Origin: Gracilinanus agilis
Taxonomy: Eukaryota
Reading direction: 5' to 3'
NCBI RefSeq assembly: GCF_016433145.1
Contig: NC_058132.1
Span: forward strand, 8,191,210-8,255,209
Length of the DNA: 64,000 nt
Part shown: piece by piece, positions 18,835 through 45,467 of the stretch
Numbering within the stretch: position 1 is the first letter of the stretch
How the letters are laid out: the number at the start of each line of letters is the position of its first letter
The notes under the pieces: generated by a model
What the model saw: the letters and a program-made list of their open reading frames with translations, nothing else
What the model was told of the DNA's origin: nothing
The model's database searches: none
Program-made: the position numbers and the translations under genes

Positions 18835-19334
18835 NNNNNNNNNNNNNNNNNNNNNNNNNNNNNNNNNNNNNNNNNNNNNNNNNNNNNNNNNNNNNNNNNN
18901 NNNNNNNNNNNNNNNNNNNNNNNNNNNNNNNNNNNNNNNNNNNNNNNNNNNNNNNNNNNNNNNNNNNNNNNNNNNNNNNNNNNNNNNNNNNNNNNNNNNN
19001 NNNNNNNNNNNNNNNNNNNNNNNNNNNNNNNNNNNNNNNNNNNNNNNNNNNNNNNNNNNNNNNNNNNNNNNNNNNNNNNNNNNNNNNNNNNNNNNNNNNN
19101 NNNNNNNNNNNNNNNNNNNNNNNNNNNNNNNNNNNNNNNNNNNNNNNNNNNNNNNNNNNNNNNNNNNNNNNNNNNNNNNNNNNNNNNNNNNNNNNNNNNN
19201 NNNNNNNNNNNNNNNNNNNNNNNNNNNNNNNNNNNNNNNNNNNNNNNNNNNNNNNNNNNNNNNNNNNNNNNNNNNNNNNNNNNNNNNNNNNNNNNNNNNN
19301 NNNNNNNNNNNNNNNNNNNNNNNNNNNNNNNNNN
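18835..19334. other. Assembly gap (exactly 500 N, placeholder size)
   Basis: Round 500-N run, the same size as the gap at 44968-45467. Confidence 0.95.
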
Positions 19335-19341
19335 CCCCCAG

Positions 19342-22300
19342 GCCCTTCAGGCCCCCGCGTGTCACGAGAACATGGTGAAGGTCGGGGGCTACATCCTGGG
19401 CGAGTTCGGGAACCTCATCGCGGGGGATCCCCGCTCCAGGTGAGGAGAGCGGGGCGGGCGGGGAGGGTGGTGGGGGGGGGCCTCCGTGCCGACCGGCCTG
19501 GCCCTGTGCCCGCACAGCCCCCCGGTGNNNNNNNNNNNNNNNNNNNNNNNNNNNNNNNNNNNNNNNNNNNNNNNNNNNNNNNNNNNNNNNNNNNNNNNNN
19601 NNNNNNNNNNNNNNNNNNNNNNNNNNNNNNNNNNNNNNNNNNNNNNNNNNNNNNNNNNNNNNNNNNNNNNNNNNNNNNNNNNNNNNNNNNTGCAGCAGCG
19701 GGCCGTGGAGTACCTGACCCTCAGCTCCATCGCCAGCACCGACGTCCTGGTCAGTGGGAGGGGCGGCGGCGGGGCTCCGCGGGCCCCTGCGGCCTGCCCA
19801 GCCTGAAGGCCTCTCTGCCCCCAGGCCACGGTGCTGGAGGAGATGCCCCCCTTCCCGGAGAGGGAGTCGTCCATCCTCGCCAAGCTCAAACGGAAGAAGG
19901 GCCCCGGGGCCGCCGGCACCCTGGACGATGGGCGCAGGGAGCCCGGGCCCGGAGGCGATGTGAATGGGGGCGTGGAGCCAGCCCCCAGCTCTGGGGTAGG
20001 AGCAGGCGGAGAGGGGGGCGGCCAGAGGAGTGGGTGGCTGTCTGCCCACCCGGCACTACCCAGGGACCCTCTCTTTTCAGTCCACACCCTCGCCCTCTGC
20101 CGACCTCCTGGGGCTGCGGGCGGCCCCTGCCCCCACGGCCACCCCGGCTCCCACGGGTGCCGGCAGCCTTCTGGTGGACGTGTTCTCAGACAGCCCCATG
20201 GGGGGCCCACCCAGCCTGGGGCCCACCCCCGAGGAGGCCTTTCTCAGGTACCCGGCCCTTTCTCCTGGGTTGGCCACCTGCCCACCCCTCTGCCTGGCCC
20301 TCTCTCTCGGTGGCCTGTCTGCCCCCCACCCGCTGCCCCTTCTCTCTCAGGCTGCCCCCTCTCTGGGGCCTCCCCCTCTGGCTCCTCTCTTTGCTGTCCT
20401 TGGGCTGAGCCTGCTCTCCTCTCTCTGCCTTGCTGCCTCCCTGGGATTGGCCGCCCGCCCTGTCCTCCTCCCGTGTCTGTCCTGGGATCGGATGGCCCAG
20501 TGAGCTGGAGCCCCCCGCCCCTGAGAGCCCTATGGCCCTCTTGGCCGACCAGGCTCCAGCTGCTGAGTAAGGGGNCGCCCCTGAGAGCCCTATGGCCCTC
20601 TTGGCCGACCAGGCTCCAGCTGCTGAGTAAGGGGGAGGGGGCCGGAGACCTGGGGCCTGAGGGGTGGGGGCTGGCTGCAGGGGTCAGGGAGGGGGCCGGG
20701 GTGCTGGGGGCCCCAAAGGGGGAAGCCCTGGGAGGGGGAGCCCCGAAGGGGTGTGGTTTTTGCCCCTCCTCGGCCCGGCCCTTGTCGCCTCATCTCTCGT
20801 CTTTCCTTCCAGCACAGCAGCCGAGGACCCCGGTGTCCCCATCCCTGAGGCCGATGAGCTTCTGAATAAGTGAGTTCCAGGGGCCGGGGAGGCCTGGAGA
20901 GGCAGGGGCAGCCCCAGAGTCTGGGCCCGCGGAGGCCTAGGCTGGCCCTCACCGCTGGCCCTCGGTCCCTACAGGTTTGTGTGCAAGAACAACGGGGTCC
21001 TCTTCGAGAACGCTTTGCTGCAGATCGGGGTCAAGTCTGAGTTCAGGCAGAACCTGGGTGTGTGAGCCGGGGAGCGGGAGGGTGTTTGGGGGGGCAGGGC
21101 AGGGGCCCCTGGGGGCCAGGCCGGGCTCAGTTGTCTCTTTTCCAGGCCGCATGTATCTCTTCTATGGGAACAAGACCTCGGTCCAGTTCCAGAACTTCTG
21201 CCCCACCGTCAGTCATCCTGGAGACCTCCAGACTCATATCCTTCTCAAGACTCGGGGCCCCAATTCTGGGCCCCCCATCCCTGCCCTCCCCCACGTCTTA
21301 GGTGCCCTGCTGTGGGGCTCCCCCTCCCCAGTCCCTGTTGCCTGCCCAGGTTTCCTTCCTTGACAGCCTCCTGGGGGCACAGCTGGTGGTACAGACCAAG
21401 CGGGTGCCAGGGCAGGTGGATGGGGGTGCCCAGGTGCAGCAGGTCCTCAACATTGAGTGTCTGAGGGACTTCCTCACACCCCCACTGCTGACTGTGCGTT
21501 TCCGGTGAGAGGCTGAGGCATGGGGCCTCAGGAGGTGTAGACAGGGCCAGGCCTGGTCCCCAGGCTGTGGGGTGGGTGGAGAGAGCCTTGGGAGGTGCAC
21601 ATGGGGCTGGCCTGGTGCCCAGGCTGACCAGTAGTACCTAGCCTGGCCTTCCCTTGCCTCCCTGCTGCCCAGGTATGGGGGTGCTCCTCAGGCCCTCACC
21701 CTCAAGCTGCCGGTGACCATTAACAAGTTTTTCCAGCCCACTGAGATGGCTGCCCAGGATTTCTTCCAGCGTTGGAAGCAGCTGAGTCTGTGAGGAGCCG
21801 CCAGGCCTGGGTCCGGGGTGGAGGGCCAGGGGATTGCGGGCTTGGCCCCGAGGCCGGCCCGGCGGGGGCTCAGCCTTTTCTCTTTCCCTCCCGCTATCCC
21901 CAGCCCCCAGCAGGAGGCCCAGAAGATCTTCCAGGCCAATCACCCCATGGATTCAGAGGTGACCAAGGCCAAGGTGAGGGGCCGGGACCCCCCGGGTCAG
22001 GAGGGGGTCGGGGACCCGGGCTGGCGCGCCCTGAATCTGCCCGCTTTGTGGTCACAGCTCCTAGGCTTTGGCTCGGCCCTGCTGGACAACGTGGACCCCA
22101 ACCCCGAGAACTACGTGGGCGCCGGCATCGTGCAGACCAAGGCCCTGCAGGTGGGCTGCCTGCTGCGGCTGGAGCCCAACGCTCAGGCCCAGGTGAGTGG
22201 GGGCGGCCCCCCAAGGAGGGTCCTCCCGGCCCCCCCTGCCCACGGCCCCCTGACCCCTGCTTCCTTGTCTCCTGGTGCAGATGTACCGCCTGACTCTCCG

Positions 22301-22593: not shown

Positions 22594-24836
22594 CTAGAGG
22601 ATTGGGGTGAGGGCGTGCAGGGTCCGGGTGGCCAGGCCCCGTAGGCCGTGGACCGGGCTCCGGGGACTCACCAGCAGCAGGAGCCGTCGGGGCCCCGCCT
22701 GCACGGCCACCAACCGGAGCCCAGCCCCAGGGTCGTCCCGGCCCCCCAGGCATTCAGCGGTCGCCCCAGACACCACGTAGCAGGCTCGGGGAACCTCTGA
22801 GGGGCCCCCCTGCTCCTCGGCCTTCTCCTCTGATGATCCCGCCTCTGAAAAGAAAAGGGATGAGCCGGCTGCGGGGGGCCTCCCAGGCTCCCCTGCCCTC
22901 CCTGCCCCGAGAGGCCTGCTGACCTGGGGGGAAGTGGGTGCCAGTGACCAGCACGTAGAAAGAGCGCAGGAGGCGCCGCCGGCTCCTGGGGGAAGGGCCT
23001 AGAGCAGAGACAGAGGAGGACCATGGAGGACCATGGAGCCACCTGCCCGTCCCCCCCCCCCCCCAGCAAGCCACCCCAAGGCTTACCTTCCACCCCACCG
23101 AGTTCCACAGTGAAGAGGCCACGTCTCTGCTCCAGGTGCAGGAGGAGGAGTCTGCTGGGGAAGACCCTGTTAGCTGGTGGGGAGGGCGGGCTGGAACCAC
23201 TAAGGCCCTGGCTCCCCTCTCACTTACCCCAGAATGTCAGGGTGCACGGGGAAGCCTGCAGGAAGCCCCCTGGGTGCCAGGGCCAAGCAGGCTCTGAGAG
23301 GCTCCAGCACCGGCTGCCACCAGCGCTCCAGGACCTGGGAGAGAGGGGTGGAGGGCCAGAGGTCAGGGCAGAGGCCAGGCCGGGCGCCAAGCTGTGCCCT
23401 GGGCTCCTTTGGTGGCCGTGGGCCAGGGGCTTACCTGAGGCTCCACTTGGCTCAGAGGGGGCTGAGGGCCACACAGCATACAGAGGTCCAGGCCTGGCAG
23501 CAGCATGAGTGTCAGGAGCCGGTGAGGCACCTGGCAAGGCGGCAGCTTAGGGGGAGGCTAAGGAAAAGCTCCCCTGCGTCCCTTCCCTGGTCCCTGCTCT
23601 CCCCACTCACCGTAGGGCTCCCGTGGGGCAGATAGACAGGGTAGTCACGGGCTGCCTGGAGTGGGAGTGCGCCCACCAGCCAGGGCAGCAGCACTGACTC
23701 TGGTGCCCCAAGGCGCCACCAGCCCTGGGTAGCCGCTACTACCCGGCCCCTGGCCACCAGACTGGCAAAGACGCTGCCCACCTCCTCGGCGATGCCCGCC
23801 AGGGCTTCCTGTGGGAAAGCTGGGTTCACCTTGTGCTCCTGGCCCTCCCGTGCCCTCCCCAGGCCCTGAGCACACCTGCAGCAGGGCCCCATCGGGAGGG
23901 GCGATGCAGTCCACACACTGGGTCAGGTCCCCTACGAGCTCAGAGTCCAGCAGCAGGCTGTCGATGAGGCTGTAGGTGGCCTGGGGAGAGGAGCGGGCAG
24001 AGCCGTGAGTGCCAGCCCAGAGCCTTGTGGCCTGCCCGCGGCCCCTGCCCCCCCACTCACCCTCAGGTCCTTCTTCAGCCTCTCCACGTTGCGGATTTTG
24101 GTCAGCTCTTCCAGTCCAACCAGCAGGACCTAGGGACAGATATTGTGGGGGCCTGGCCGCCTGGGGGCCCTGGGGCAGGGGGGGAGGGGAGGCGGGGCCG
24201 GCACCCCCCACTGCAGCTCTCACCATGGCCCCAAACACCAGCTCCAGCAGCCGCTCCAGTCTGAGCTCTGGGGACCCCTGCTCCGAAGACAGCACGATGA
24301 GGCTGATGCTGCGGAGGGAAGGGTGGGGGGCTGCAGCGGTCAGGGCCCGTGCTGCAGCCTCCCCTCTACAGCAGGAGATGCAGCCAAGGCCCGGGGGCAC
24401 CCAGGGCCTGCCCCCATCCCCCTACCTGTCGTGGAAAGTCTTCCATACCACCGTAGTGTCCTCGGTGCGCGCCGAGCGCAGCGTCACGTCCAGGTTCGCG
24501 CCGAACATGTGCACGCCATTGAGGGAGCCGATGATGGAGAAGGGCAGCTGCAAGGGGCATGGGGTCGAGGCTGGAGCGGAGGAACCAAGACCTCCAGGTG
24601 CCGGGTCTGAGAACTACGACTCCCGGCAGGCCCTGCACCAGGGACGCTTCAGGGCCCGGACGCGCGGAGGCTGCCGGGAACTGTAGTTCTCCCCGCCCCC
24701 AGCCCGCTTCTGCCATAGGCCCCACCTGCTGACGGGAGGGGGTGCCCCCGCGGCTGCTCCTGCAGAACAGGGGTACTCCGCTGGAGGCGGCGAGGCAGAG
24801 CAGGTGCACGGCGCCCTCGATGCTCTCTTCCGCCAT
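22594..24836 (-). CDS. FUZ: Fuzzy planar cell polarity effector (CPLANE subunit), 427 aa
   Basis: 11 GT-AG exons: 24836-24726, 24547-24426, 24308-24224, 24129-24061, 23980-23876, 23808-23611, 23530-23435, 23334-23228, 23151-23087, 22998-22924, 22844-22594; total 1284 nt. Protein runs MAEESIEGAVHLLCLAASSGVPLFCRSS...LATRTLHALTPIL*. Confidence 0.96.
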
Positions 24837-24859
24837 GCCGGCCCCGCGGGGCAGCGCAT

Positions 24860-25360
24860 GAGTCACGCAGAGACCAACCCCGCGCTCCGGGACAGAAGGA
24901 CGAAGACGTCCACTTCGATCGGGGAAGTGGTCCCTCTTCTTCCAGCCGGCCGGAAGTGCGTGCGCCCGAATCAAAGATGGCGGCCTCCAGACTCTATCCC
25001 GCTCCGTTTCCGTTATTAGAAGTTTTTACGCCCACATCAAAGATAGCGACAGCCCAGACCCTTCACTACGATGGAGGGGACGGATCTCAGGACTGAGATG
25101 CTCTCTTTGCTCTGCCAGCGGCTCCACTTCAGGAAGTGCGCGCTCCCCTATCAAAGGTGGCGGCGGCGGCCTGGACTCGCCCAGCCGAAACATATTCCGG
25201 AGTCAGTTGTTCTGCAGAGAGCTGAGCTCTCTCCCCGGGCGTCTGGTGCCTCGCAGGTGCTTCTCGCCTCCTTAGCCTACTGGTCACTAGCTAATTCTAG
25301 CCTTCATCCCAAGGCACAATTCCAAGATGGCCGAGGCTAAAGGGGTTGCCTAGCAACCAC
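24860..25360. promoter_or_regulatory. FUZ proximal CpG-island promoter
   Basis: ETS sites (CCGGAAGTG about 24950, AGGAAGTG about 25131), YY1-like AAGATGGCGGC at 24974-24984 and CAAGATGGCCG about 25323, X-box GTTGCCTAGCAAC at 25345-25357. Confidence 0.7.
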
Positions 25361-27084
25361 TCTCGCTTTCGCAGGGCCCAATACAACCCATGAATCGGGA
25401 CAGCAGCAGCGGGAGGCCAGGCACTTGGTCAAAACTGAACTGGGGGGTTTTGATGTCACATGTTTTGCGTTGACTCTGTCGTTGATATGGTTAGGTTAAA
25501 GGATTTTCTGCTATTGAACCAGCCCAGAGTTCCCAGTGTAAAATCAATCTGGGCTTCTTTGTGATGCCTTCTGCCTCATCCAATTTGTACCCACTGGAAT
25601 TTAAACTTTTGATTGAATGAACAAAAAAAGCCTTTATTAAGCACTATGTACTGCGGAAACAAATAAACAAATTAAGACCAGCTCTGCTGTCAAGAAGCTC
25701 ATAGGCTAAGGAGGGAGACAAATACAGGAAAGGTTTCCACCCCAAAGGAAAGGCCCCTTAGTAGTCCTTAGGGTGCATTTGCAAAATAGATAGCAATGCC
25801 TCTTGAATATAATTTCATTGTTAAAATCAAATCGAAAGTGTGATTTTTCTGATTTGAAAATGACATCTGACTACCATGGGATCAGGAAGCAAGAAGTTTC
25901 TCTTTTGGGTTGAGATTGAGGCCTAGAGTCCACTCGGATTCCTTTTCTAGAAGCTGTGTGTGATTCCGGGTCCAGTTGTCCCCTTTTTGACCCTCCAGTC
26001 TGTGTGTCCTGAGACATTATTCCTAACACGAAGAATACAATGAGTAGGATACAATGCAATGAAACTTCGAAAGAGTTGCCTTAGAAACAGACTGACAAAT
26101 GAGCATTTCCTTTCCTTTGGCCCCCTCTTTAAAAAGTTTGCCCATCACTGCTCTAGGGTATAAAGCAATGATCCCTGGTTTTGGACCCAAGACCTACCTG
26201 TTTCGTAGAACTCTTCTTTCCCCAAAGACAAAACCACACTCCTAAATCCTGCAAGTCTAAAGAGTAGGAATTTGGAAGGATCCCCATTCTCCTTGTGGAT
26301 CCTTTTGTGGATGCTGGTAATGGGGAATCTATTTTTCTGTGTCTTCTCTTGCCTAAGGATCTAATGGCAGAGAGAACCTGACTCTAGCTAAGGCCAGACC
26401 AGGAGCCAGTGACTAAGGAGAGGGTTTTATCCATCCTGGTGTCTCACATCAGATGTTTTTGAGGGCCGAGGTGATACCTCTAGGACCAGGGAAACTCTCC
26501 TGACTCCTGGCTTGGGCCCATTACTCTGACCTAGAATGTGATATTTCCCTTGGTTTCCCTCCCTCCTGCTGAAGTAGAAGGCATTTGGTTAGGGGAGCCT
26601 GCACTCTCCAGTAGCATGAAGTATTACCTGAAATGACCTTCCTTTAATTCTCCCTCTACTTTGTATAACTCTTTGCCCTTCCTTAAAGTTTCTTTTTAAA
26701 TCTCCAGCTGGATGGTACATTGGAAAAAATATTGGGTCAGGAATCAGGAAAATGAATTCAAATCTAACCTCAGATATTTCCTAGATGTGTAATCCTAGAC
26801 AAGTCACTTAACTTTTGTCTGCCTCATTTTCTTCAACCGTAACATGAAGATAACTTTCCTTCTAGGGTTGTCATGAGAATCAAGACAGTGCTGGTAGAGT
26901 GCTTAGCACAGTGTCTGGCACATGGTAGACAGTTAATAAAAGCTTGTTCCACCCCTTCCTCTCCTCCTATTTTTCTCTAACAGATTGCTTTCATCTTCTA
27001 CCAATCCCTCTCTCTCTAATCTTTAGTCTCTTACTATTGGTTTCTTCTTTGAAACCAATGTATACTCGAAGATTTTCTCTTTAA

Positions 27085-27870
27085 ACCATTCAATTCAATG
27101 AACATTTATTGAGCACCTATTAAGTGTCAGGCACTGTGCTAAATGCTGGATTTACAAAAAGAGGCAAAAAGACAATCCTGCCTTCAGGGAGCTGATAGTC
27201 TAAAAGGAAGGGGGCAACATGCAAATAAATGTATACAAAACGAGCCATAAACAGAATGAATGGGAAATAATAAACAGAAGGAAGGCACTGAAATTATGAG
27301 GCATTAGGGTAAGCTTCCAGTAGGTGAGATTAAAAGAAACCAGGTAGGTTAGTAAAGTGGAGGAAGGAGAGCATTCTAAGTCACAGAGAATGCCAAGTTG
27401 AGACAGAATATCCTGTTTGTGAAATATCCAGGAGGCCAGCGCCACTGGATCAAAGAGTATGTGTTGGAGAGAAAGAGATTAGAAGACAGGAAAGGTAGGA
27501 GGGGACTAGGGAAGGAATGACTGAATGCCAACCAGAGATTTTCTATTTGCACCTGAAGGCAATAGGATGCTGCTAGAATTTATTAAATACGGGAATGACA
27601 TGGTCTGACTTGAGCTTTAGACTTTGGGCTTGCACCAGGATAAGGGCACTGGGGGAAGAGAAAAGAGAATGTTTTTGAGAAACAAGCCTCGGCAACAGCT
27701 TGGGTTGGGTGGAATAAGAGAGGAGGAGTCCGGGATGACGCCTGGCTCGTGAGCCTGAGAAAGTAGGTAGAAGGGATGAGGTTTTAGGTAGAAGGGATGA
27801 GGTTTTAGGGGGAAAGATGAGTTTCATGTTGGACATATTGAGTTTAAGCTCCTACTGGACATTCAGTTCA
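27085..27870 (-). mobile_element. LINE-2 fragments
   Basis: L2 3'-end signature (CATTTATTGAGCACCTATT..GGCACTGTGCTAA) on the reverse strand. Further L2 pieces lie at about 25620-25800 (-) and 28130-28500 (+). Confidence 0.65.
27768..27809. repeat. 21-bp tandem duplication
   Basis: GTAGAAGGGATGAGGTTTTAG x2. Confidence 0.85.
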
Positions 27871-28769
27871 AGATGTGGAAGCCAAATTATAAGGGGTTAA
27901 GAAGAAAGGGGAGAGGAAATGGAGGTTCCAATTGCAGATGGCCTTTTGGAGGAGTTCAGCTACAAAGAGAAGAAATCTAGCACAGAAGGATCCTATTTTC
28001 TTGGCATCCCTGAGCAGAAATGGAAGGATAAAGTGAATTTTTTTTTGTCTCAAATCTCTTTTCTCTACATTTCTTGAAACAAAAAACCTCTTATAATTAG
28101 TATTTCCATTTCTTCTCAATCTATTCCATATCATCTGTAATTTTGTTTTCTGCCTCCTCATTCAATTGAAATAGGTTTCTCCAAATGTAACAAATGATCT
28201 TATAATGACTAAATCTCATGGCTTTCTCTCAGTTCTCATCCTTTGTGATTTCTTTCCTGGGCTCTTTTCTCTTCTTCCTTGATACTGAGTCATAGGTCAT
28301 CTCTTTGCAGATGATTCTCATAGCTACTGATGCAGTCCTAAACTTTCCTACATCTACTCTTTGAATTCCCTACTTCCTATTAGACACCTCAAACTGGATG
28401 TTCCACAGATGTCTGAATGTCTAAAATTTAACTCATTGTCTCGTTCCCCATCCCACCAACCTTCCCCTCCTTCCTAGTTTTCTATTATGGTTGAGGATAT
28501 TATCATCCTCCTAGGCCCTCAGGCTTGTAACATCATTTTCTTTCCTCTTGGGTGCAGTCAGAGGGGGATGGGGATTCAGGCTAACCTGGAGCTTCAGAAA
28601 TTTGGACACCTTTATTCCTGGCCAACAGGGTGAGGAGGGAGACCCGAATCGGGATGAGGGTGAAGCTTGTGTGCATAGAGAAGTCAGAGGTACACGCGAC
28701 AGCAAAGGAGGGAGCAAGGTCTGTCAAGAAGCAAATTCCAAAGCCTTCAACTTCCAACATAGGAGGATG

Positions 28770-33491
<4,722 letters not shown>

Positions 33492-33513
33492 GGCCGCCCC
33501 CGTGTGGCAGCCC

Positions 33514-33519
33514 AATAAA
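33514..33519 (+). terminator. MED25 polyadenylation signal
   Basis: AATAAA 22 nt after the stop codon. Confidence 0.75.
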
Positions 33520-33640
33520 GCTTCCTTGTCCCAGCCTCTGGTCTGGACTCGTGCTTGGGGACGAGGGGCCCGGCAGGGCTTCCCCCCTCCCCTGCAGCCC
33601 CGGGGGGACAGACAGACCGGCAGGTGCTAGGAAAATAAGT

Positions 33641-33646
33641 TTTATT
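33641..33646 (-). terminator. PNKP polyadenylation signal
   Basis: TTTATT on the + strand, 17 nt beyond the PNKP stop codon. Confidence 0.75.
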
Positions 33647-33663
33647 GGGGGCCGAGGGTGGGC

Positions 33664-36500
33664 TCAGCCCTCGGAAAACTGGCCGTACAGGGCCGCGTGC
33701 CGGGCATCTGCAAATTGGGGACGAAATGGGATCTCCAGGATCTGGGAGAAGCCCTCGGCCAGAGAGGGGGCGACGAACTGCTTCCTGGAGGGGGAAAGGA
33801 GTCAGGTTGGGTGGGAGCGTCCAGCTCCCCCCAGGGGTGCCACTGCCAGCCCCCCTCGGTCCAGGGCTTACCTGTAGCTGAACATGACCATGTCCGACAC
33901 CGCGGGGTGCGGGGAGCCGATCATCTCTCGGAACTGTGGGGAAAGTCACAGTGAGGGCCGGCTCAGAGGCTGGCGTGGCCACGGCCGGGCCCGGCCCCTC
34001 CTTACCCGGTTGTTGTGTCTGGCCAGCTCCAGCGAGGCGGTGAAATGGAAGCACCTGCAGGGCACCCCGGCGTCCTTGGCGCAGGAGACGTACCTGCCGG
34101 GGGAGGGGGATGAGGGCCCCGGCCCCTTCCTGTGGCCCCCCCCACCTCAGCACCCCCCGGGTACCTGGCCCGGCTTGCAGGGTCGGGGTTTGTGTTGTCC
34201 ACGACAGCTCGGCCCCCGGCCTTCAGGGCCTCCGTGCACACAGCCACGCACTTCTGCCAAGAGCCCAGCGTGTCCTGGGGGAACACAGACGGGAGCTGAG
34301 CCCCGGCCTCCCCCCGCCGTGACGCGCTCTGGGACCACGGGAAGGGCCTCCGCTGCAAGGGGAGGGTCGTGGCCCCCCGGCCCCCACATACCCGGTTTGC
34401 ATAGACGTAGCCCGCCGATACCAAGTGTTTCTGGAGGAAAGTTGACTTCCCGGCTGCAGGAAGGGCCAGAGACAAAAGTCAGGGCTGGGGGGTGTCTGGG
34501 GAAGCTGATGGGGACGGGGTGACGGGAGTCAAAGGCCACCTCACCAGCGGGGAAGCCGACAGCCACTACGATCTCGGGGCCGGGGCCCAGCAGAGGTCCA
34601 GCGGGGGGCAGGCACAGCGGGCCGGTGGGGCTCAGCGTTCTCTGCAGGGATGGGGGGAGGGATGAGGCCAGGCTCTCCGCCAGGCTCCCCTTGGTCCCAC
34701 CTCCCCTCTGGGGTGCCCCCGGCCTCACCGGGTCGAACTCTGGAAGCACAAAGCGGGCGGGAGCCCAGTTCAAGAAAAACTCTTCCGGGGTTGAGAATCG
34801 CAGACCGAGGTTCAGGGCAAACTGAGGGAGGGAAAGAGTTAGGCTCAGAAGAGGGTTCCCCCATCGCCAAGAGTTGGGGGGGCTGGGCAGAGGGTGCCCC
34901 TCACCAGCCGATCCGCACAGGAGAAGTCCTTCTTCTTCTGGCCCGGAGCCCAGTTGGCTGGACGGCCTGCAGCATCTGAGGACAGAAGCTGGTGTCAAAC
35001 CCCTGCCCTGGGAGCCAGAGGGGTTGTGGGCCTCCCTGCTCCCCCAAACCGCTTCAGGCCTCACCTCCCACATAGACACTGTCCGCCAAAGAGATTGGAA
35101 CCCCCTCGTTAGCCTGAGAGAAAGGGGAAAGTGCTGAGTTCGGGTGGGGAAATCCGGGTAGCGGGGGGGGGGGAGTCCCAGCAGTGAGCACCCCAAAACA
35201 GACCACGGCACCCCACTCCCCCCAGGCCGAGGAGGGCACCTGCTCACACAGGTGGTCCCACATGCCCGTCACTGGCTTCCGGTAAACGCCCGAGCTCGTG
35301 GCCACCAGCACCTGTGGGGACAAAGAGGGGAATGAAGGGAATGAAGAGAAAACCCCTCCCAGGCAGCCCTGATAGCCCAGCTACTCCTCAGCCCACCTGG
35401 AAAGGGACTCCCAGGGTGGCCAGCACCGCCTCCACCTTGGTCTGAAAGTCTTGGGGGCGCAGCCGCCCTCGCCCGATGCCAAGCTGGTTGGTGAAGATGA
35501 CAAGCTGTGGACACGGAGGGGAGCCCGGGTCATTCTGGGGGTCCCTGAGCCTTGGGCCAGCCCCCCAGGCCTTGGGCCAGTACCTTGTAGCCACTGGCCT
35601 CGAGCTCCCGGAGTCGCTTAGGGATCCCGGGGAAGAGAATCCTGGTGGAAGGAGGAAGGTAGAAGGTGATGACATAGGCAGGCACCACGCCTGGCCCAGG
35701 GGCTCCTCCACAGCCCTCGGCCTCACCTCCAATCTTCAGGGCCGGTGGGGAAGACCTTCCCTGATCGGGTGGTGATGAGGGTCCCGTCCAGGTCAAAGGC
35801 GGCCACCTGCAGGTACACATCGTTAGGACCTGGGATCGAGGGGGTCCCCGAGCCTCCCCCCAGAGGCCCAGGGCGCTCACCTTCTCTTGGGGCCGGGCTC
35901 CAGGGGCTGTGAACATCAGCAGGGGCCCAAGCTCCTGCCAGCCATCGGAGCAGCGAGGCCGCTTCTTGGGGGGCGCCGCCTCGGGGCTGCTGGGCCGCGG
36001 CTCTGGGTGTGGGGGGTCCGGGGCCCCGCGCAAAGTCAGCGGGTGCAGGCCATTCACCAACAGCAGCGTCTCCCCAATGGCCAGAGGTGCCTGGGAGCCC
36101 GGGCTCAGCAGGGTGCTCCCAGCAGTGGAGGGATTCACGCCCAGCTGAAGTGGGGTGGGCCTGACCATTAGTCCCGCCCCCTTCACCTCACCCTCCCATG
36201 CCCATCTGCTGACCCCGCCCCGGTACCTGCGTCACCATCACGATTTGAGATTCTGGGTCCACGCACAGCTTCACTAAGGGGGGAGGGGGAAAGAATTGAT
36301 GCCCCGCCCCCTTAGAGCTCAGGCCCCGCCCCGAGCCCTCGGCCCTCACCCCCACCTTGACTGCGAGAGCACTTCCGGTCCGTGACTCGAGTCAGTGGTC
36401 CCCGGCCCAAAACGAGGCTGTGGCCCGCCGGGGGTAACGGGATCGGAGGCGGCCCTCCGGGCGGGCTGTGAAGCCACAAGCAGGGTTCCGGTGTCGCCAT
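33664..36500 (-). CDS. PNKP: Polynucleotide kinase 3'-phosphatase (FHA, HAD phosphatase, kinase), 508 aa
   Basis: 16 coding exons: 36500-36356, 36273-36227, 36144-35881, 35806-35727, 35641-35584, 35504-35397, 35311-35240, 35113-35065, 34975-34905, 34821-34729, 34641-34545, 34453-34392, 34274-34165, 34093-34006, 33933-33872, 33784-33664; total 1527 nt. Motifs [38 protein letters not shown]; ends QFSEG*. Confidence 0.97.
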
Positions 36501-37427: not shown

Positions 37428-38647
<1,220 letters not shown>

Positions 38648-39299
38648 CCACGCCCTAGGGAAGAGAACAGAAGGGGTGACCCAGGCAGAAACCTTCGGAG
38701 CTGGTCTAGTATATGGAAATTCCAGTCTCCCCCACCCCTTTATTAACAGGAAAGAAAAGGAATGGAAATGAGACCTGCAGAAGCTGTTTAGTCCAATCCC
38801 CTTCTTTTATGGAAAAGGCTTCGTAAGCTCAGACAGGGCCCTGGCCAGGCTGTCACTCTCACTTAAGTTGCTTGGGCAGAGTCCCCAACAACGATGCCAT
38901 GGGGGGGAGTAACAGGCCAGAAACTATCACCCCAACCCAAGGGCTGGTGACACGGAATGCCTGACGGTGAAGGTTTCAGGGAAGGGACAATCCAGGATTG
39001 CCAGGAGGAGGGGGAAAGCGACAGAGTTCGGAATCGCATTCAGGTTTCCTCCTAAGAGAGGACCCCCTCCAAACCTGCCACAAGTTCCCCCAGTTTGGAG
39101 ATGGAACAGTTGCTCAGCTCCGCCCTCCACGTGGGAAAACAGGAAGTCCCTCCCCTTGTGGGCGGTACAAGAAGTTCAGAGGTAAAAGACAGCCTCGATC
39201 CTGGGAGGGGGGGAAGAGTCGATCCCGTCCCCACCCCCACCCCCGTGAAGAATAAAGGATGTCCCGCCTCCAGGGGCGGGGAAAGGCTTAGCTGTCTTT

Positions 39300-40363
39300 G
39301 GGAGGAGGAGGGGAGAAAAAAAAAAAAAAAGGCTGGAACCGGAAGTCCCGCCCTTGCGTGGGAGAGGGGGGGAACGCCAGCAGTCCGACCCCAGGTCGCC
39401 CACCCCCCCCCATCCTCCCGGCGTAGGATAGGGGCCTGGTGTCAGAAAGGTTCCGGGCCAAGCCCCGGGGCCTCGAGACCCCAGCCACTTGGCACCCTCC
39501 TGCGAGGAGGGCTGCGCTCTCTCCACTCGCTTACCTCGGCCGGGCTCCCGTCTCCCTGCCTCCCTCCCCGCCAGCTTTCGTTCCTCCCCAGGCGTCAGCA
39601 CCGCTGCCGCTCACGTGCCTGTGGCCAGCATGGCGGGCCAGGCGCCCTCACAGGCCATGGCGGCCTCGGCGTCACTTCCGCCCGGCGCCAGCCTCTTTGG
39701 AGCGCCTCCGCAGCCTACCCCCGTTTTGCAAGGAGGTGCCCCGCCCTGTCCTTAAGCATCATGGCGGCTGCATAGTTTTATGTCTCCGCCCCTCGAGGTC
39801 CAAGGCGCCTCCGCCTCAGACCTTAGAGCCAGGGGCGGCCACGCCGCTTTCGACCTGCGGGGATGGCCCAGGACATCATGGGTACGGCTTTCTCTGGCTG
39901 ACTCCCGCTTCGCTTCCCTTCTTCCCCCCACTTCCTGACACGGAAGTGGCCTGCCCCACACTAACATGGCGCTCACTGCAGCGCAGCTCGCTCCCTTCAA
40001 AGATGGCCACCCTGCTATGACATCCCTGGGCGCGGGGGCGGAAAAGGCGCGGCACGTGTGCAGGGGCGCGGCTTGGCACCCTCCGCCTTTGTTTACTTCG
40101 TGCGGGGAGCCCACCCAACGCGCCGACGCACTGCCCACTCTAGCCACCGCCTTCCCATTGCGTCTGCGCGGAGAGCGTCTGCCCCACCCCTTTCTCCCGT
40201 TCCTGTTCACCCGATGGTTTGACCCATTGGAGACTTAAGAAACAGACAAACGCTACCATTTCATTCTCTTCGAGGGGAGGCCCGACCCGCCGGATGTGAC
40301 GTGAAGAGGCTGTCTCCGGAGGTGGAGCGAGCTAGGGGAGTGGCCTCGGCCCTAGCTGCGACT
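39300..40363. promoter_or_regulatory. AKT1S1/TBC1D17 bidirectional CpG-island promoter
   Basis: Head-to-head genes; ETS CCGGAAGT/ACTTCCG sites near 39340, 39675 and 39940; YY1-like CATGGCGGC and AACATGGCG; CACGTG at 39612 and 40053; GTGACGTG near 40296. Confidence 0.7.
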
Positions 40364-43300
40364 ATGGAGGAGGCTGGCTACCGGGTAAGAGGTGATGGAG
40401 AACCTAAGAGGTCTCTGGCACTACCCTTCCCCCCTTTTTGAAACTTGAGTCCTGCCCTTTTCTGCTCTTCTCTGGGTAATCCCACCCGGCCCCTGATCTC
40501 AACGCATGCGCCTTCCCTGGGCCCGAACCCTAAGTAAAAATTGCGTTCGCGTCTCTCGTTTTTCCGCGCATGCTCCCCCCACCCAGATACCGCCCTCATG
40601 GCAGTGCGCATGCGAGCCTTTCGCCCTGGGGCGCCTGCCTCCCCCTCTCCCCAGACTTCTCTTGAGTCCCACCCCCGCTCGTAGGTGGTGTTCGAAAAGG
40701 GCGGCGTGTTCCTGCACACGAGCGCCAGGGGGCGGCACCAGGACCCGGGTTCTCTCATCGCCGGCGTACTGCGCCTGCTCGAGAAGGTGAGGCTGGGCAG
40801 GCGGGCGGGGCCCGGGGGCGGGGCCCTCTAGCGTAACCCACGTGGGAGGGGCAGGGTGGAGTCAGCCTCCGGCATTTGTCTTCTTGCCCTTCCCCCACCC
40901 AGGACAATGACGTCATCCTGCATTGGGCCCCCCTGGAAGAGGCCGGAGACTCCTCCCACGTGGTGTTCTCCAGGAAGGTGGGTGCCCGCCCCCCCCTCAC
41001 CCCCCCGTAGCCTCTGGGTCCCCCTCCTCTGGCGTGATTCGGAGGTCCCGGAGTATACTGAGTTTCTCTGACACATTGAGGCTCTGTTCCTCCTTGTATA
41101 TTCAGGCCCTCCCCTCCCCAGTGAGCAGGGACCCCCGCGTATTTAGGCTTTCTCCTACTCCAGGATAAATCCACGCTCCGTGTCTCCCAGTGTTTATTCC
41201 GCGGTCCTCTCCTCTGGCCCGGAGATGCTCAGGCTTTCAGCACCCCCCCCAGGGCTTTCTGGGGGCTCCCATGTATTCAGGAGGGCCCCCTTTCCTCGTG
41301 CTGGCTCAGCGGGCATCGTTCCCCACAGGCTCAGGAGCAGATTCGGGTTCACATTCGGTGCCCTCTTGATGTTTGAGGCTGCGGCTTCACATTCACCCTC
41401 TGCCCGGTGCTCCCTGCCAGAGGCTCCAGGGCAGACACGGAGTCCTGTGGCTTCATTGTCCCTTTTCACCTCAGGAGCCTGGTGGGGGAGACCCCTGCCC
41501 TTCGGAGGAGGAGCCAACCTTTGACCCCGGCTACGAGCCAGATTGGGCTGTGATCAGCACTGTGCGCTCCCGGCCCCGGCCCCCGGAGCCTGCCCCAGGT
41601 ATGTAGCCAACCAGCCCCAGAGTGGGGCTGGCCAGGACGTGGGCCGGGACGTGGGCAAGGACGTGGGGACGGTTAGAGAGGAGGCCGCCCGGTAGGGGAG
41701 CATCCCTGGCCTGGGTGAGGATTGAGCTGGGCCTAGGAGGCAGGGCAATGGCATACGGAGGGGTAAACATTTCCTGAGGAAGTTGGAGAGGACGGCGGGG
41801 GTAGGATGGGGCAGGGCGGGTTTCTGAACCCCGGAGCTGGCATCACGGTGGGTGCCGGGGGTGGAGTGGAGGAAGGCCCGAGAGAAGAGGGGGGTCTTAG
41901 GATGATAACCTTAAAGCGAAGGAGGCTGGGGGAGCTCCGCAGTGACAAGGGTGACCCCACATGGTGGGTTTGAATCAGGTGGGCCAGGGCTGAGTGGGAG
42001 CTCCAGCCTGAGCAGTTGGGCATCTTTGGCCATCTGGAAGGAGGTCCTTTCAGGAGACGGGCAGGGCACAGGCCGGCATGCAGAAGTTTGGAGGGCCTGG
42101 GTGATGAGGAATAGAGGTGGCACTTTTTAGGAATCCCCCTTTTCAGATTGAGGAGAGAGGGTTGGAGCCCCAAGAAGCATCCTGGGAGGAAGAAGAGCAG
42201 GTGAGAACTGGGCACGTCCCCCTGCCCCAGCAGGCTCTCTCGATCCTTCTCTCTAGCTGCAGGGGCAGGCAGCTCCCGGGGCCCCTGGGCCTTCTCCGTG
42301 AGCCTGGGGGAGCTGAAGTCGATTCGGCGCTCCAAGCCGGGCCTGGGCTGGGCCTACCTGGTGCTGGTGACCCAGTCGGGTGGCTCCCTGCCGGCTCTCC
42401 ACTTCCATCGAGGGGGTACCCGGGCCTTGCTGAGGGTCCTCAGCCGATACCTGCTGCTGGCCAGGTGAGTATCAGCCGGGTTGCCCCTGGGCCACGCCTT
42501 GCCCTGCTTCCCTCATTGTTCACGTCCTCTTTTCCTTCTCGGCCTCTGCCTCGGCGACGCTCGGCCTCAGCTCCCCCCAGGACTCTCGGCTCTACCTCGT
42601 CTTCCCTCACGACTCCTCCGCCCTCTGCAACTCCTTCCATCACCTCCAGCTCTTTGATGATGACAGTTCCAACTTGGTGTCTGTGAGTCTGGGCTGGAGG
42701 AGGGCCCAAGGCCCGGGCCAAACAGGGAGGGAAGAGGAGGAGGAGAGGAGGGGGCCGGGGCATGACCTTCTCTCTTCTGCCCCCTCCTCAGCGTTTCCTC
42801 CAGGACCCCTATGCAGCCACCTTTGGTGGTTTCTCGCGGGTGACCAACTTTTTTCGAGGAGCCCTTCAGCCTCCCCATGACGGGCCTCCACCTGGCCGCC
42901 CAGAGGTCCCTGATGACGAGGAGCCGGAGCCCGGCTTTGAGGTCATCTCCTGTGTGAGTGCCTGGGAGGTGGGGAGAGACGGTCTCTGCGGGCCAGGTGG
43001 GTGGGCTGCCCGGGTGAGCTGCCGCTGCAAATCGTCTTCTCTCCCACGTGGGGCCAGCGCAGGTGGAGCTGGGGCCTCGGCCAGTGGTTTCCCGGGGGCA
43101 GCCTGTGACAGAGGATGTGTGGGCCGGACACGTGGGTCCTGATGGGCAGCTTCAAGACGTTGAGGGACTCAAGGCTCAGATCTTCTCAGGGGTGAGTGGC
43201 CGGGGCTCCTGGGGGGCTGGGGGAGGGGTGGTGGGAGCCAGGAGGGTTTGGTGACGGTCACTTCTCCTCTCCTTAGGGCTTGTGCCCGGCCTTGAGGAGA

Positions 43301-44967
43301 GAAGCCTGGAAGTTTCTGCTCGGATATCTCAGCTGGGAGGGCTCGGCCGAGGAGCACAAGGCCCACGTCCGTAGGAAAACGTGAGTGTGGGGGCGTACGG
43401 ACCCCGAGCCCCCCCCAGGAAGAGCCTGGCCCAAGGCCCATGCTCTGGGGGCCCTCGAGGGGCCGCTTGCTTGTGGGGGGGCGGGACTGCCTCTGAGCGA
43501 GTTCCGAGGCCAGCTCCGATCCTCGTTCTCCCCGCTTTGCCGGTGGGTTCAGGGACGAGTATTTCCGCATGAAGCTGCAGTGGAAGTCCGTGAGCCCCGA
43601 GCAGGAGAGGAGGAACTCGCTGCTTCACGGTTACCGCAGCCTCATCGGTCAGTGCTGGGCCGGCCCCCCGGGGAGGGCCGCGGGCTGGGCCGGGCGGCTC
43701 TGGGGCCTGACCCTTCTCTGGCTCTTCTCCCAGAGCGGGACGTGAGCCGCACGGACCGCAGCAACAAGTTCTACGAGGGGCCGGGAAACCCGGGCCTGGG
43801 GCTGCTCAACGACATCCTCCTCACCTACTGCATGTACCACTTCGACCTGGGTGCGTCCAGGGCGAGCTCTGGGGGTTGGGTGGGCCGGGCGTGCGGCCGC
43901 CAGTCTGGGTGACCGTCGGGCTCGTCCGCACTTCCAGGTTACGTTCAGGGCATGAGCGACCTGCTGTCCCCCATCCTGTACGTCACTCAGAACGAGGTGG
44001 ACGCCTTCTGGTGTTTCTGCGGCTTCATGGAGCTCGTGGTGAGAGGGGCGCCGGGGCTCGGGGGGGCTCGGGGGGCTCCGGGGAGGCCTCGCCAGCTTCA
44101 GCCGCCTCTTTCTGCCTCCAGCACGGGAACTTCGAAGAGAGTCAGGAGACGATGAAGCGCCAGCTCGGGCAGCTGCTGCTGCTGCTGCGGGTTCTGGACC
44201 CCCCCCTCTGCGACTTCCTCGGTAATCGCGGGCTGAGGACGGTGCCTCGGGCGCCGGAGGAGGCCCCGCGTGTGCGGCGGAGCGTCGCCGTGAGTGCGGC
44301 CTCGGCCGTCCCGGGCCCTGTGCCGTGCCCGAGGCTCCACGGCTGGCGGGTCTCCCGGGGAGGCGGCGGGCCGGGGATGGGAAGTCACGGCCTTCGCTCC
44401 CTCCGCAGACTCCCAGGACTCGGGCTCCCTGTGCTTCTGTTTCCGCTGGCTGCTCATCTGGTTCAAGCGCGAGTTCCCCTTCCCCGACGTCCTGCGGCTG
44501 TGGGAGGTGAGTGGAGGCCGGCCGGGGGGGCGGGGGGGCGGAGAGGGGGCCCCCGCTGAGGCCTCTCTGCGCCCCCAGGTGCTGTGGACCGGGCTGCCCG
44601 GCCCCAACATGCATCTGCTGGTGGCCTGCGCCATCCTGGACATGGAGAGGGACGCCCTCATGCTGTCCGGCTTCGGCTCCAACGAGATCCTCAAAGTGAG
44701 CAGCGGGAGCGGCGCCGCCCTCGGCCTCCGCCTGGCCCTCCGGCCGGCCCGCTCACAGCCTCTCCGTGTCTCCTCAGCACATCAACGAGCTCACCATGAA
44801 GCTCAGCGTGGAGGACGTGCTGACGCGCGCGCAGGCGCTCTACACGCAGCTGGCGGCCTGTCCGGTGAGACCCAGCCCCGAGCCCCGTCCTTGCCCCGCC
44901 TCACGGACCCCCCCCTCACTCTGGCCTCTGCCTCTTCCCCCAGGAGCTGCCCCCCAACGTGCAGGAG
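40364..44967 (+). CDS. TBC1D17: TBC1 domain family member 17 (Rab GAP); last exon truncated by gap
   Basis: Exons 40364-40384, 40685-40786, 40903-40977, 41475-41598, 42257-42464, 42571-42682, 42792-42953, 43063-43191, 43277-43380, 43553-43647, 43734-43850, 43938-44038, 44122-44221, 44409-44506, 44579-44695, 44778-44864, 44944-gap. MEEAGYRVVFEKGGVFLH...; catalytic IERDVSRT and YVQGMSDL motifs present. Confidence 0.96.
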
Positions 44968-45467
44968 NNNNNNNNNNNNNNNNNNNNNNNNNNNNNNNNN
45001 NNNNNNNNNNNNNNNNNNNNNNNNNNNNNNNNNNNNNNNNNNNNNNNNNNNNNNNNNNNNNNNNNNNNNNNNNNNNNNNNNNNNNNNNNNNNNNNNNNNN
45101 NNNNNNNNNNNNNNNNNNNNNNNNNNNNNNNNNNNNNNNNNNNNNNNNNNNNNNNNNNNNNNNNNNNNNNNNNNNNNNNNNNNNNNNNNNNNNNNNNNNN
45201 NNNNNNNNNNNNNNNNNNNNNNNNNNNNNNNNNNNNNNNNNNNNNNNNNNNNNNNNNNNNNNNNNNNNNNNNNNNNNNNNNNNNNNNNNNNNNNNNNNNN
45301 NNNNNNNNNNNNNNNNNNNNNNNNNNNNNNNNNNNNNNNNNNNNNNNNNNNNNNNNNNNNNNNNNNNNNNNNNNNNNNNNNNNNNNNNNNNNNNNNNNNN
45401 NNNNNNNNNNNNNNNNNNNNNNNNNNNNNNNNNNNNNNNNNNNNNNNNNNNNNNNNNNNNNNNNNNN
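44968..45467. other. Assembly gap (exactly 500 N, placeholder size)
   Basis: Round 500-N run that hides the TBC1D17 stop codon, 3'UTR and polyA signal. Confidence 0.95.

What the first reader, a model, noticed from the sequence alone, without database searches (positions are those of the whole stretch)
33491..33666. PTOV1 is absent: MED25 and PNKP meet tail-to-tail with no room for it
Seen: the MED25 stop (33491) and PNKP stop (33664) are 172 bp apart, in gap-free sequence, with polyA hexamers at 33514 (+) and 33641 (-). Known: in human and mouse, PTOV1 lies between MED25 and PNKP and consists of two domains homologous to the MED25 ACID/PTOV domain. Inference: this is the pre-duplication state, and PTOV1 arose as a tandem partial duplication of MED25 ACID exons after the marsupial-eutherian split. 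A clean marsupial loss is the alternative.
Basis: partly seen in the sequence, partly recalled or inferred. Interest (0 to 1): 0.7.

Follow-up and report, generated by a model that had tools for sequence, protein, structure and literature searches.

The report
Opossum MED25-PNKP junction lacks PTOV1
In this opossum, as in three other marsupial orders and a turtle, MED25 and PNKP end tail-to-tail with no PTOV1 between them, which points to PTOV1 being a gene that placental mammals made by copying five MED25 exons twice, not an ancient gene.

Summary
MED25 (+, stop 33489-33491) and PNKP (-, stop 33664-33666) are 172 gap-free bases apart. Each stop is followed by an AATAAA, at 33514 (+) and 33641 (-). 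No second ACID/PTOV-type exon occurs anywhere in the 64 kb window.

The same junction is found in wallaby (173 bp), monito del monte (166 bp), bilby (137 bp) and a turtle (516 bp). Aardvark and tree shrew have PTOV1 at that spot.

Two searches of a 5.8-billion-protein collection found two-domain vertebrate PTOV1 only in placentals, from all four superorders. The one "fish PTOV1" hit is a faulty MED25 gene model.

In tree shrew, both PTOV1 domains have the same four intron positions and phases as the MED25 ACID exons. PTOV1 is therefore a genomic copy of those exons, made twice. It sits downstream of MED25's own poly(A) signal.

A domain tree places the PTOV1 domains with placental MED25 (99/97). 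An AU test rejects grouping them with the Drosophila "PTOV1 homolog" (p 1.6e-46).

What stays open is gain on the placental stem versus gain in the therian ancestor followed by marsupial loss. Synonymous divergence and further AU tests cannot separate them, and monotremes were not examined.

The parts
29270..33491 (+). MED25 coding range (ATG 29270 to TGA 33491), a compact 4.2 kb gene
   Evidence: ATG and N-terminus MVPGAEG... at 29270. Pfam Med25_VWA on exon 1 and Med25 (PTOV/ACID) on exons A4 and A5. Same span as the 761-aa MED25 gene call in Gracilinanus agilis.
31590..32511 (+). The only ACID/PTOV-domain exon set in the window. Pieces: A1 31590-31649 (3' part of its exon), A2 31738-31823, A3 31897-31954, A4 32115-32222, A5 32320 onward. 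Introns fall after EWQE (phase 0), inside GEN|L (phase 2), after QQLL (phase 0) and after NGF (phase 0).
   Evidence: Exon ends and splice sites read. Pfam PF11232 E 4.5e-21 (A5) and 4.3e-08 (A4). PDB MED25 ACID chains E 1e-26 to 1e-34. Both rat PTOV1 domains map only here.
33391..33491 (+). MED25 last coding exon, ending ...[11 protein letters not shown] then TGA (33489-33491)
   Evidence: Sequence read. The same C-terminus occurs in Dromiciops, bilby, turtle and tree shrew.
33514..33519 (+). MED25 poly(A) signal AATAAA, 22 nt after the stop
   Evidence: A CCCAATAAA block is shared with Dromiciops and tree shrew. The turtle has AATAAA 28 nt after its stop.
33492..33663 (.). 172-bp spacer between the two stop codons, holding both convergent 3' UTRs. 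It has no N and no room for a gene.
   Evidence: It aligns at 109 of 174 columns with the 166-bp Dromiciops spacer, best around the two hexamers.
33641..33646 (-). PNKP poly(A) signal (TTTATT on +, AATAAA on -), 17 nt after the PNKP stop
   Evidence: Conserved in position in Dromiciops and bilby and present in turtle and tree shrew.
33664..36500 (-). PNKP coding range (ATG read on the minus strand at 36500; stop 33664-33666)
   Evidence: Pfam FHA_2, PNK3P and AAA_33 on its exons. N-terminus [11 protein letters not shown].... Best database relatives are marsupial PNKP proteins. Same span as the 508-aa PNKP call in Gracilinanus agilis.
37428..39658 (-). AKT1S1 (PRAS40), next gene beyond PNKP
   Evidence: Pfam PRAS_NT 4.9e-25 and PRAS 9.7e-22. 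Span taken from the Gracilinanus gene table.
40364..44967 (+). TBC1D17. The gene model stops at the N gap 44968-45467.
   Evidence: Gene table with PH_RBD and RabGAP-TBC, mapped onto the window. Not examined further.
22600..24836 (-). FUZ, upstream neighbour of MED25 (approximate lower end)
   Evidence: FUZ N-terminal peptide in minus-strand frames. Fuz_longin gene call at the matching place in Gracilinanus and in the turtle.

Best explanation
The window shows the ancestral amniote arrangement. MED25 and PNKP are transcribed towards each other and end about 170 bp apart, each with its own short 3' UTR and AATAAA. PTOV1 never existed at this place in the marsupial lineage.

PTOV1 arose later, on the stem of placental mammals. 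A genomic segment carrying the five exons that encode MED25's ACID (PTOV) domain was copied into the gap downstream of MED25's poly(A) site. It was then doubled, or copied twice, giving domains A and B. All four introns were kept in place and phase.

Shown: absence in four marsupial orders and a turtle; presence only in placentals among vertebrate proteins; identical intron positions and phases.

Inferred: the direction (gain, not loss) and the timing (after the marsupial-placental split).

The insect 'PTOV1 homolog' is a separate, independently made two-domain protein.
For: - Junction and hexamers in the window.
- No second ACID copy in 64 kb.
- Same PNKP><MED25 junction, flanked by AKT1S1 and TBC1D17, in wallaby (173 bp), Dromiciops (166 bp) and bilby (137 bp). 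In the two loci with DNA (Dromiciops, bilby) there is one ACID exon set and no N.
- Turtle has FUZ-MED25><PNKP with 516 bp between coding ends and one ACID exon set.
- Controls: aardvark has PNKP><PTOV1; tree shrew has MED25-PTOV1><PNKP.
- Horse PTOV1 against 5.8 billion proteins: about 60 placental PTOV1 clusters, then the score drops straight to MED25.
- A search scored only on the A/B junction of rat PTOV1 returned 431 candidates. Every hit that spans the junction is placental. The bird, turtle, lizard, frog and caecilian hits listed cover 42% of the region, that is one domain, apart from one turtle MED25 isoform counted at 100% cover with 46% identity.
- An exhaustive HMMER scan found two-domain hits only in placentals and insects, plus one artefact.
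- Intron positions and phases are identical in MED25 ACID, PTOV1-A and PTOV1-B.
- ML tree: placental MED25 + PTOV1-A + PTOV1-B form a clade at 99/97 that excludes sauropsid, amphibian, lungfish and coelacanth MED25.
- Two derived residues (T>S, V>L) are shared by placental MED25 and PTOV1-A but not by marsupial or sauropsid MED25.
- MED25's own AATAAA is kept 14 nt after the stop in tree shrew, so PTOV1 lies beyond it.
Against: - Timing is not fixed by sequence. dS between tree-shrew MED25 and PTOV1-A or PTOV1-B (0.62, 0.64) is no smaller than dS between tree-shrew and marsupial MED25 (0.57-0.60). This rests on about 90 synonymous sites at GC3 above 0.8.
- One site (D/E in exon A3) groups PTOV1-A with sauropsids, against the two sites above (opossum state read).
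- AU tests do not reject trees with PTOV1 outside amniote, tetrapod or sarcopterygian MED25 (p 0.105, 0.227, 0.292).
- No marsupial or monotreme MED25 was in the tree, because the joined exon row was left out.
- Monotremes were not examined. Frog and goose loci were uninformative.
- Absence of marsupial PTOV1 elsewhere rests on protein collections, not on a whole-genome DNA search.
- A published review states that PTOV1 is conserved in fish and insects (PMC5355357).
Confidence: 0.7

Rival explanations
1. PTOV1 arose in the common ancestor of marsupials and placentals (or of all mammals) and was deleted cleanly on the marsupial stem, leaving MED25 and PNKP abutting.
For: Paralogue dS (0.62-0.64) is about equal to placental-marsupial orthologue dS (0.57-0.60), so the copy is about as old as that split. 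One residue (D/E) places PTOV1-A with the outgroup state. AU tests leave the branch point open. Monotremes were not examined.
Against: It needs two events instead of one. The deletion would have had to restore exactly the outgroup-type junction, with both short 3' UTRs and both AATAAA intact as in the turtle, and leave no exon remnant in four orders. The junction was already fixed at the base of living marsupials. Two derived residues join PTOV1-A to placental, not marsupial, MED25.
Confidence: 0.22
2. Marsupials do have PTOV1, but it lies elsewhere in the genome, or in unassembled GC-rich sequence, and has escaped annotation.
For: No whole-genome DNA search of a marsupial was possible with these tools. 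This chromosome region is very GC-rich and the window has assembly gaps elsewhere.
Against: No marsupial two-domain protein turned up among NCBI, UniRef, ENA, JGI and Logan-derived proteins, although marsupial PNKP from eight species was found readily in the same collection. An exhaustive HMMER scan gave no such hit.
Confidence: 0.04
3. PTOV1 is an ancient bilaterian gene, as the literature says (a Drosophila orthologue, conservation in fish), and has been lost many times in vertebrates, marsupials included.
For: Drosophila and a mayfly have VWA-less proteins with two PTOV domains. A review and a comparative paper treat PTOV1 as conserved in insects, fish or bilaterians (PMC5355357, PMC4568025).
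Against: An AU test rejects a clade of placental PTOV1 domains with the insect two-domain proteins (lnL 101.9 lower, p 1.6e-46). In the tree the insect proteins sit in a separate 100/100 clade, while PTOV1 sits inside vertebrate MED25. The only 'fish' two-domain hit is a MED25 model with one exon repeated identically. The scenario would need losses in lobe-finned fishes, amphibians, sauropsids and marsupials.
Confidence: 0.02
4. The close junction is an assembly artefact: a collapse that dropped PTOV1.
For: The best DNA run holding the stretch may be the assembly's own source.
Against: Three other marsupial assemblies from different orders give the same junction at 137-173 bp. The two with DNA have no N, and the spacers can be aligned.
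Confidence: 0.01

Closest known systems
Placental MED25-PTOV1-PNKP locus (human 19q13.33; here seen in tree shrew and aardvark)
   Same: Same neighbours and orientations: FUZ(-), MED25(+), PNKP(-), AKT1S1(-), TBC1D17(+). MED25 has the same short 3' UTR with AATAAA just after the stop. PNKP has the same C-terminus and poly(A) signal.
   Different: In placentals PTOV1 (+) lies between MED25 and PNKP, and PTOV1, not MED25, ends tail-to-tail with PNKP, about 1.0-1.4 kb apart between the gene calls. In the opossum the two stops are 172 bp apart and nothing lies between.
Turtle (Platysternon megacephalum) FUZ-MED25-PNKP locus
   Same: MED25 and PNKP are tail-to-tail with no PTOV1, there is one ACID exon set, and an AATAAA follows each stop.
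   Different: The spacer is 516 bp rather than 137-173 bp, and MED25 spans 10.8 kb rather than 4.2 kb.
Drosophila 'protein PTOV1 homolog' and the mayfly two-PTOV-domain protein
   Same: Same architecture as placental PTOV1: two PTOV/ACID domains and no VWA domain.
   Different: Not the same gene by descent. They group with other invertebrate sequences, and joining them to placental PTOV1 is rejected. In the mayfly, and less surely in Drosophila, the two domains are each other's nearest relatives, which suggests separate doublings.
Lineage-restricted genes born by partial tandem duplication of a neighbour
   Same: A subset of the parent gene's exons is copied next to it, introns are retained, and the new gene lacks the parent's other domains.
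   Different: Here the copied module is doubled inside the new gene. The product is reported to oppose the parent's function (PTOV1 antagonises MED25 in RAR activation: Youn et al. 2011, seen only as a reference; not tested here).

Membership tests
MED25 (Mediator subunit 25) orthologue | N-terminal VWA domain plus a single ACID/PTOV domain in one gene | tested here: met
   Pfam Med25_VWA on exon 1 and Med25 (PF11232) on exons A4 and A5. PDB MED25 chains E 2e-34. The Gracilinanus gene call of 761 aa has VWA, SD1 and PTOV.
MED25 (Mediator subunit 25) orthologue | Conserved position between FUZ and the PNKP/AKT1S1/TBC1D17 block | tested here: met
   Same order in turtle and tree shrew.
PNKP orthologue | FHA domain, PNK 3'-phosphatase domain and P-loop kinase domain in one gene | tested here: met
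   FHA_2 3.6e-10 and PNK3P 5.4e-06. AAA_33 scored 4.7e-05, below Pfam's own cut-off on the single exon. Nearest proteins are marsupial PNKP.
PTOV1 gene | Two tandem PTOV/ACID domains without a VWA domain, encoded between MED25 and PNKP | tested here: not met
   Only 172 bp lie between the stops. There is a single ACID exon set in 64 kb. None was found in Dromiciops or bilby DNA, or in the wallaby gene table.
PTOV1 gene | A PTOV1 orthologue elsewhere in a marsupial genome | tested here: inconclusive
   No marsupial two-domain protein in the protein collections. Whole marsupial genomes could not be searched at the DNA level.
Tandem partial gene duplication (origin of PTOV1 from MED25) | Copies keep the parent's intron positions and phases | tested here: met
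   In tree shrew all four introns (EWQE| phase 0, GEN|L phase 2, QQLL| phase 0, NGF| phase 0) are identical in MED25 ACID, PTOV1-A and PTOV1-B. They are the same in the window's MED25.
Tandem partial gene duplication (origin of PTOV1 from MED25) | The copy branches inside the parent's clade, after the marsupial-placental split | tested here: inconclusive
   The free tree gives a 99/97 clade of placental MED25 + PTOV1. AU tests do not reject earlier branch points. dS is about equal to the therian split. No marsupial row was in the tree.

The most novel reading that the evidence does not exclude
PTOV1 is a placental-mammal invention: a VWA-less double copy of MED25's activator-binding domain, made from five MED25 exons and dropped into the roughly 100-bp gap between two convergent poly(A) sites. 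Insects separately made the same kind of two-domain MED25 look-alike. The textbook 'Drosophila orthologue' and 'conservation in fish' would then be errors, and marsupials would be natural PTOV1-null mammals in which to study MED25 without its competitor.
Probability: 0.65. Interest if true: 0.55.

Novelty: new member of a known kind. Interest (0 to 1): 0.45.

Why it matters
PTOV1 is studied as a cancer-progression gene and as an antagonist of MED25. The review literature calls it conserved from insects to mammals.

If it is instead a placental-only gene copied from MED25, several things follow:
- Fly or fish work on "PTOV1" cannot be carried over by orthology.
- Its functions must have been added on top of a MED25 system that works without it in marsupials, reptiles and birds.
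- Opossum cells become a natural PTOV1-free mammalian background.
- It is a clean, datable example of gene birth by partial tandem exon duplication.

The locus itself, in the opossum, is ordinary.

Tried and rejected
No reads were laid.
- The run search gave only coded organisms and no RNA holder.
- The first tblastn, with whole open frames, was swamped by Pro/Gly-rich noise. It was redone with trimmed exons.
- The 'fish PTOV1' candidate P0001 was rejected as a MED25 model with one exon repeated.
- P0129 and P0139, listed with two stretches, have one domain each.
- Lizard and caecilian MED25 isoforms were not on record for locus look-up. Frog Ranitomeya gave no DNA and no neighbours. In frog Ascaphus a DUSP-like gene follows PNKP. 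In goose there is no PNKP within 6 kb of MED25. None of these bears on the junction.
- dS dating did not separate the two timing scenarios. AU tests of three earlier branch points were not significant.
- Paper searches for PTOV1 with marsupial, opossum, eutherian or placental mammals found nothing relevant. One broad search was wasted.
- No insect MED25 could be named among the hits.
- Human proteins in the hit lists (such as P0194, P0261, P0263, P0287) were not used. No human contig was fetched.
- The window's MED25 exons were never joined into a spliced protein.
Full report
**The observation.**
- The MED25 reading frame ends ...EEDILMDLI with TGA at 33489-33491 on the + strand. The PNKP frame ends ...LYGQFSEG with its stop at 33664-33666 on the - strand.
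- The 172 bases between them hold no N. The window's only N runs are at 18835-19334, 19528-19690, 20575 and 44968-45467.
- AATAAA lies 22 nt after the MED25 stop (33514). Its complement lies 17 nt after the PNKP stop (33641).
- The hexamer occurs only 2 and 4 times on the two strands of the 15 kb GC-rich block around it. The two sites are therefore not chance, and they recur at the same relative places in other marsupials (below).
- Pfam scans of single exons confirm the genes: Med25_VWA and Med25/PTOV for MED25; FHA_2, PNK3P and AAA_33 for PNKP; PRAS_NT and PRAS for AKT1S1.
- The gene order is AP2A1(+), FUZ(-), MED25(+), PNKP(-), AKT1S1(-), TBC1D17(+). This is the placental order minus PTOV1.
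- The window's coordinates fit NCBI's gene calls for the agile gracile opossum assembly exactly (MED25 29270-33491, PNKP 33664-36500). That record is taken to be the window's own source, not independent support.

**No hidden copy.** MED25's ACID (PTOV) domain is encoded by five exons at 31590-32511. tblastn of those exons, and of a rat PTOV1 protein, against all 64 kb finds only that one exon set. Both PTOV1 domains map onto it.

**Other marsupials and outgroups.** A search with a PNKP-bearing open frame of the window returned PNKP of eight marsupial species. Their loci, and the other loci fetched, show the following.

| Species (group) | Arrangement | Spacing between coding ends |
|---|---|---|
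| Tammar wallaby (Diprotodontia) | TBC1D17-AKT1S1-PNKP><MED25 | 173 bp |
| Monito del monte (Microbiotheria) | same | 166 bp |
| Bilby (Peramelemorphia) | same | 137 bp |
| Big-headed turtle | FUZ(-), MED25(+), PNKP(-), one ACID exon set | 516 bp |
| Aardvark (placental control) | PNKP tail-to-tail with a 460-aa PTOV-only gene | about 1.4 kb |
| Tree shrew (placental control) | MED25(+), PTOV1(+), PNKP(-) | about 1.0 kb (PTOV1 to PNKP) |

- The Dromiciops and bilby loci came with DNA. They are free of N, hold a single ACID exon set, and carry both AATAAA hexamers in the spacer.
- The opossum and Dromiciops spacers align at 109 of 174 columns, best around the hexamers.
- The junction therefore predates the deepest split of living marsupials.
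- The turtle has an AATAAA after each stop.
- A frog and a goose locus were uninformative.

**Who has PTOV1.**
- An exhaustive HMMER scan of 1.84 billion representatives with exon A5 gave two-domain hits only for placental PTOV1, a Drosophila "PTOV1 homolog", a mayfly protein, and one fish entry.
- The fish entry starts with MED25's VWA domain and repeats one exon identically, so it is a faulty MED25 model.
- Horse PTOV1 against 5.8 billion proteins gave about 60 placental PTOV1 clusters, including Afrotheria and Xenarthra. The score then falls straight to MED25.
- A search scored only over the A/B domain junction of rat PTOV1 had 431 candidates. Every hit that spans the junction is placental. 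The bird, turtle, lizard, frog and caecilian hits listed cover 42% of the region, that is one domain. One turtle MED25 isoform is listed at 100% cover with 46% identity and carries the MED25 domains.
- The review's statement that PTOV1 is conserved in fish (PMC5355357) was not reproduced.

**How PTOV1 was made.**
- Exact exon mapping in tree shrew shows introns after EWQE (phase 0), inside GEN|L (phase 2), after QQLL (phase 0) and after NGF (phase 0). These are the same in MED25's ACID region, in PTOV1-A and in PTOV1-B. The fourth intron is the longest in all three.
- The opossum MED25 has the same four introns.
- PTOV1 is thus a DNA-level copy of five MED25 exons, present twice. It is not a retrocopy.
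- Tree-shrew MED25 keeps its AATAAA 14 nt after the stop, within a block shared with the opossum. PTOV1 therefore lies beyond MED25's own poly(A) site, in what is a spacer of about 100 bp between convergent poly(A) sites in marsupials.

**Tree and tests.**
- The ML tree used 56 domains over 165 columns.
- All vertebrate sequences form one clade (100/99). Within it, placental MED25 + PTOV1-A + PTOV1-B form a clade (99/97) that excludes sauropsid, amphibian, lungfish and coelacanth MED25.
- The insect two-domain proteins sit in a separate clade (100/100) with other invertebrate sequences.
- Holding placental PTOV1 and the insect proteins together costs 101.9 lnL units (p-AU 1.6e-46). The Drosophila gene is therefore not an orthologue.
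- Inside jawed vertebrates the data are thin, because MED25's ACID domain hardly varies. Trees with PTOV1 outside amniote, tetrapod or sarcopterygian MED25 are not rejected (p 0.105, 0.227, 0.292).

**Timing against marsupials.**
- The ACID exons A1, A2, A4 and A5 of opossum and Dromiciops are identical in protein.
- At two sites placental MED25 and PTOV1-A share derived residues (S, L), while marsupials and sauropsids keep T and V.
- At another site marsupials and both PTOV1 domains share Q, while most placental MED25 have H.
- Pooled synonymous divergence is 0.62-0.64 between tree-shrew MED25 and either PTOV1 domain, and 0.62 between A and B. It is 0.57-0.60 between tree-shrew and marsupial MED25, and 0.79 between tree shrew and turtle (about 90 sites, GC3 above 0.8).
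- The copy is therefore about as old as the marsupial-placental split. Sequence alone cannot tell a stem-placental gain from a therian gain followed by marsupial loss.
- Presence and absence favour the first: one event, and the marsupial junction matches the turtle's.

**Limits.**
- The window's exons were not joined into a spliced model, so no marsupial row is in the tree.
- Monotremes were not reached.
- No whole-genome DNA search of a marsupial was possible.
- No human contig was fetched, and human proteins in hit lists were not used.

**Verdict.** The reading of a pre-duplication state, with PTOV1 as a tandem partial copy of the MED25 ACID exons, is supported at about 0.7, with marsupial loss at about 0.2. 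The opossum locus is ordinary. The interest lies in what it says about PTOV1's origin and in correcting the "conserved from flies to man" account. The held literature says nothing on this, though orthology databases may already imply it.

Noticed in passing
P0001 (Coryphaenoides rupestris KAG7254856.1): This fish 'hypothetical protein' looks like a two-domain PTOV1, but it starts with MED25's VWA domain and repeats one ACID exon word for word. It is a gene-model or assembly artefact that could seed false 'fish PTOV1' claims.
   Followed up: yes
Hit lists (such as P0187 Panthera leo, P0197 Suncus, P0184 Monodon): Several placental 'MED25 isoforms' of about 720-830 aa carry the VWA and SD1 domains and also span the PTOV1 A/B junction at 86-93% identity. 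They are read-through or fused MED25-PTOV1 models.
   Followed up: no
Hit lists (such as P0009, P0234, P0247, P0275): UniRef names many plain MED25 fragments, with VWA and SD1 domains, 'Prostate tumor-overexpressed gene 1 protein'. This mislabelling can inflate PTOV1's apparent distribution.
   Followed up: no
window 32320-32511 (exon A5); L002 14494-14303: Marsupial MED25 has His where other vertebrates have Pro (HFHHT against HFPHT). It has Asn where tetrapods have Tyr (IPNDQ against IPYDQ); Asn is also the state in coelacanth, lungfish, lamprey and hagfish. Both are identical in opossum and Dromiciops.
   Followed up: partly
window 33492-33530; L004 9143-9175; L001 20835-20875: MED25's very short 3' UTR is conserved. 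A CCCAATAAA block follows the stop in opossum, Dromiciops and tree shrew, and a CGCCCCCGTGTG run just after the stop is shared by opossum and turtle.
   Followed up: partly
window 44968-45467: A 500-N gap sits exactly where the TBC1D17 gene model of the matching Gracilinanus annotation ends, so that model is probably cut short by the gap.
   Followed up: no
window 24840-29270: About 4.4 kb of AT-rich, CpG-poor sequence separates the divergent FUZ and MED25 starts, in contrast with the roughly 65-70% G+C genes on either side. It is probably interspersed repeats.
   Followed up: no
L003 (Ascaphus truei) 25078-35078; L005 (Anser cygnoides) 26458-32503: In the tailed frog the gene after PNKP is a Rhodanese/DSPc phosphatase gene, not MED25. 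In the goose no PNKP exon lies within 6 kb after MED25, only an unnamed 176-aa gene call. The MED25-PNKP junction is thus not universal among tetrapods, or these models are incomplete.
   Followed up: partly
Tree: Cloeon A/B and Drosophila A/B: In the mayfly (100/99), and less surely in Drosophila (91/90, long branches), the two PTOV domains of one protein are each other's nearest relatives. This hints at separate doublings or concerted evolution within insects.
   Followed up: no
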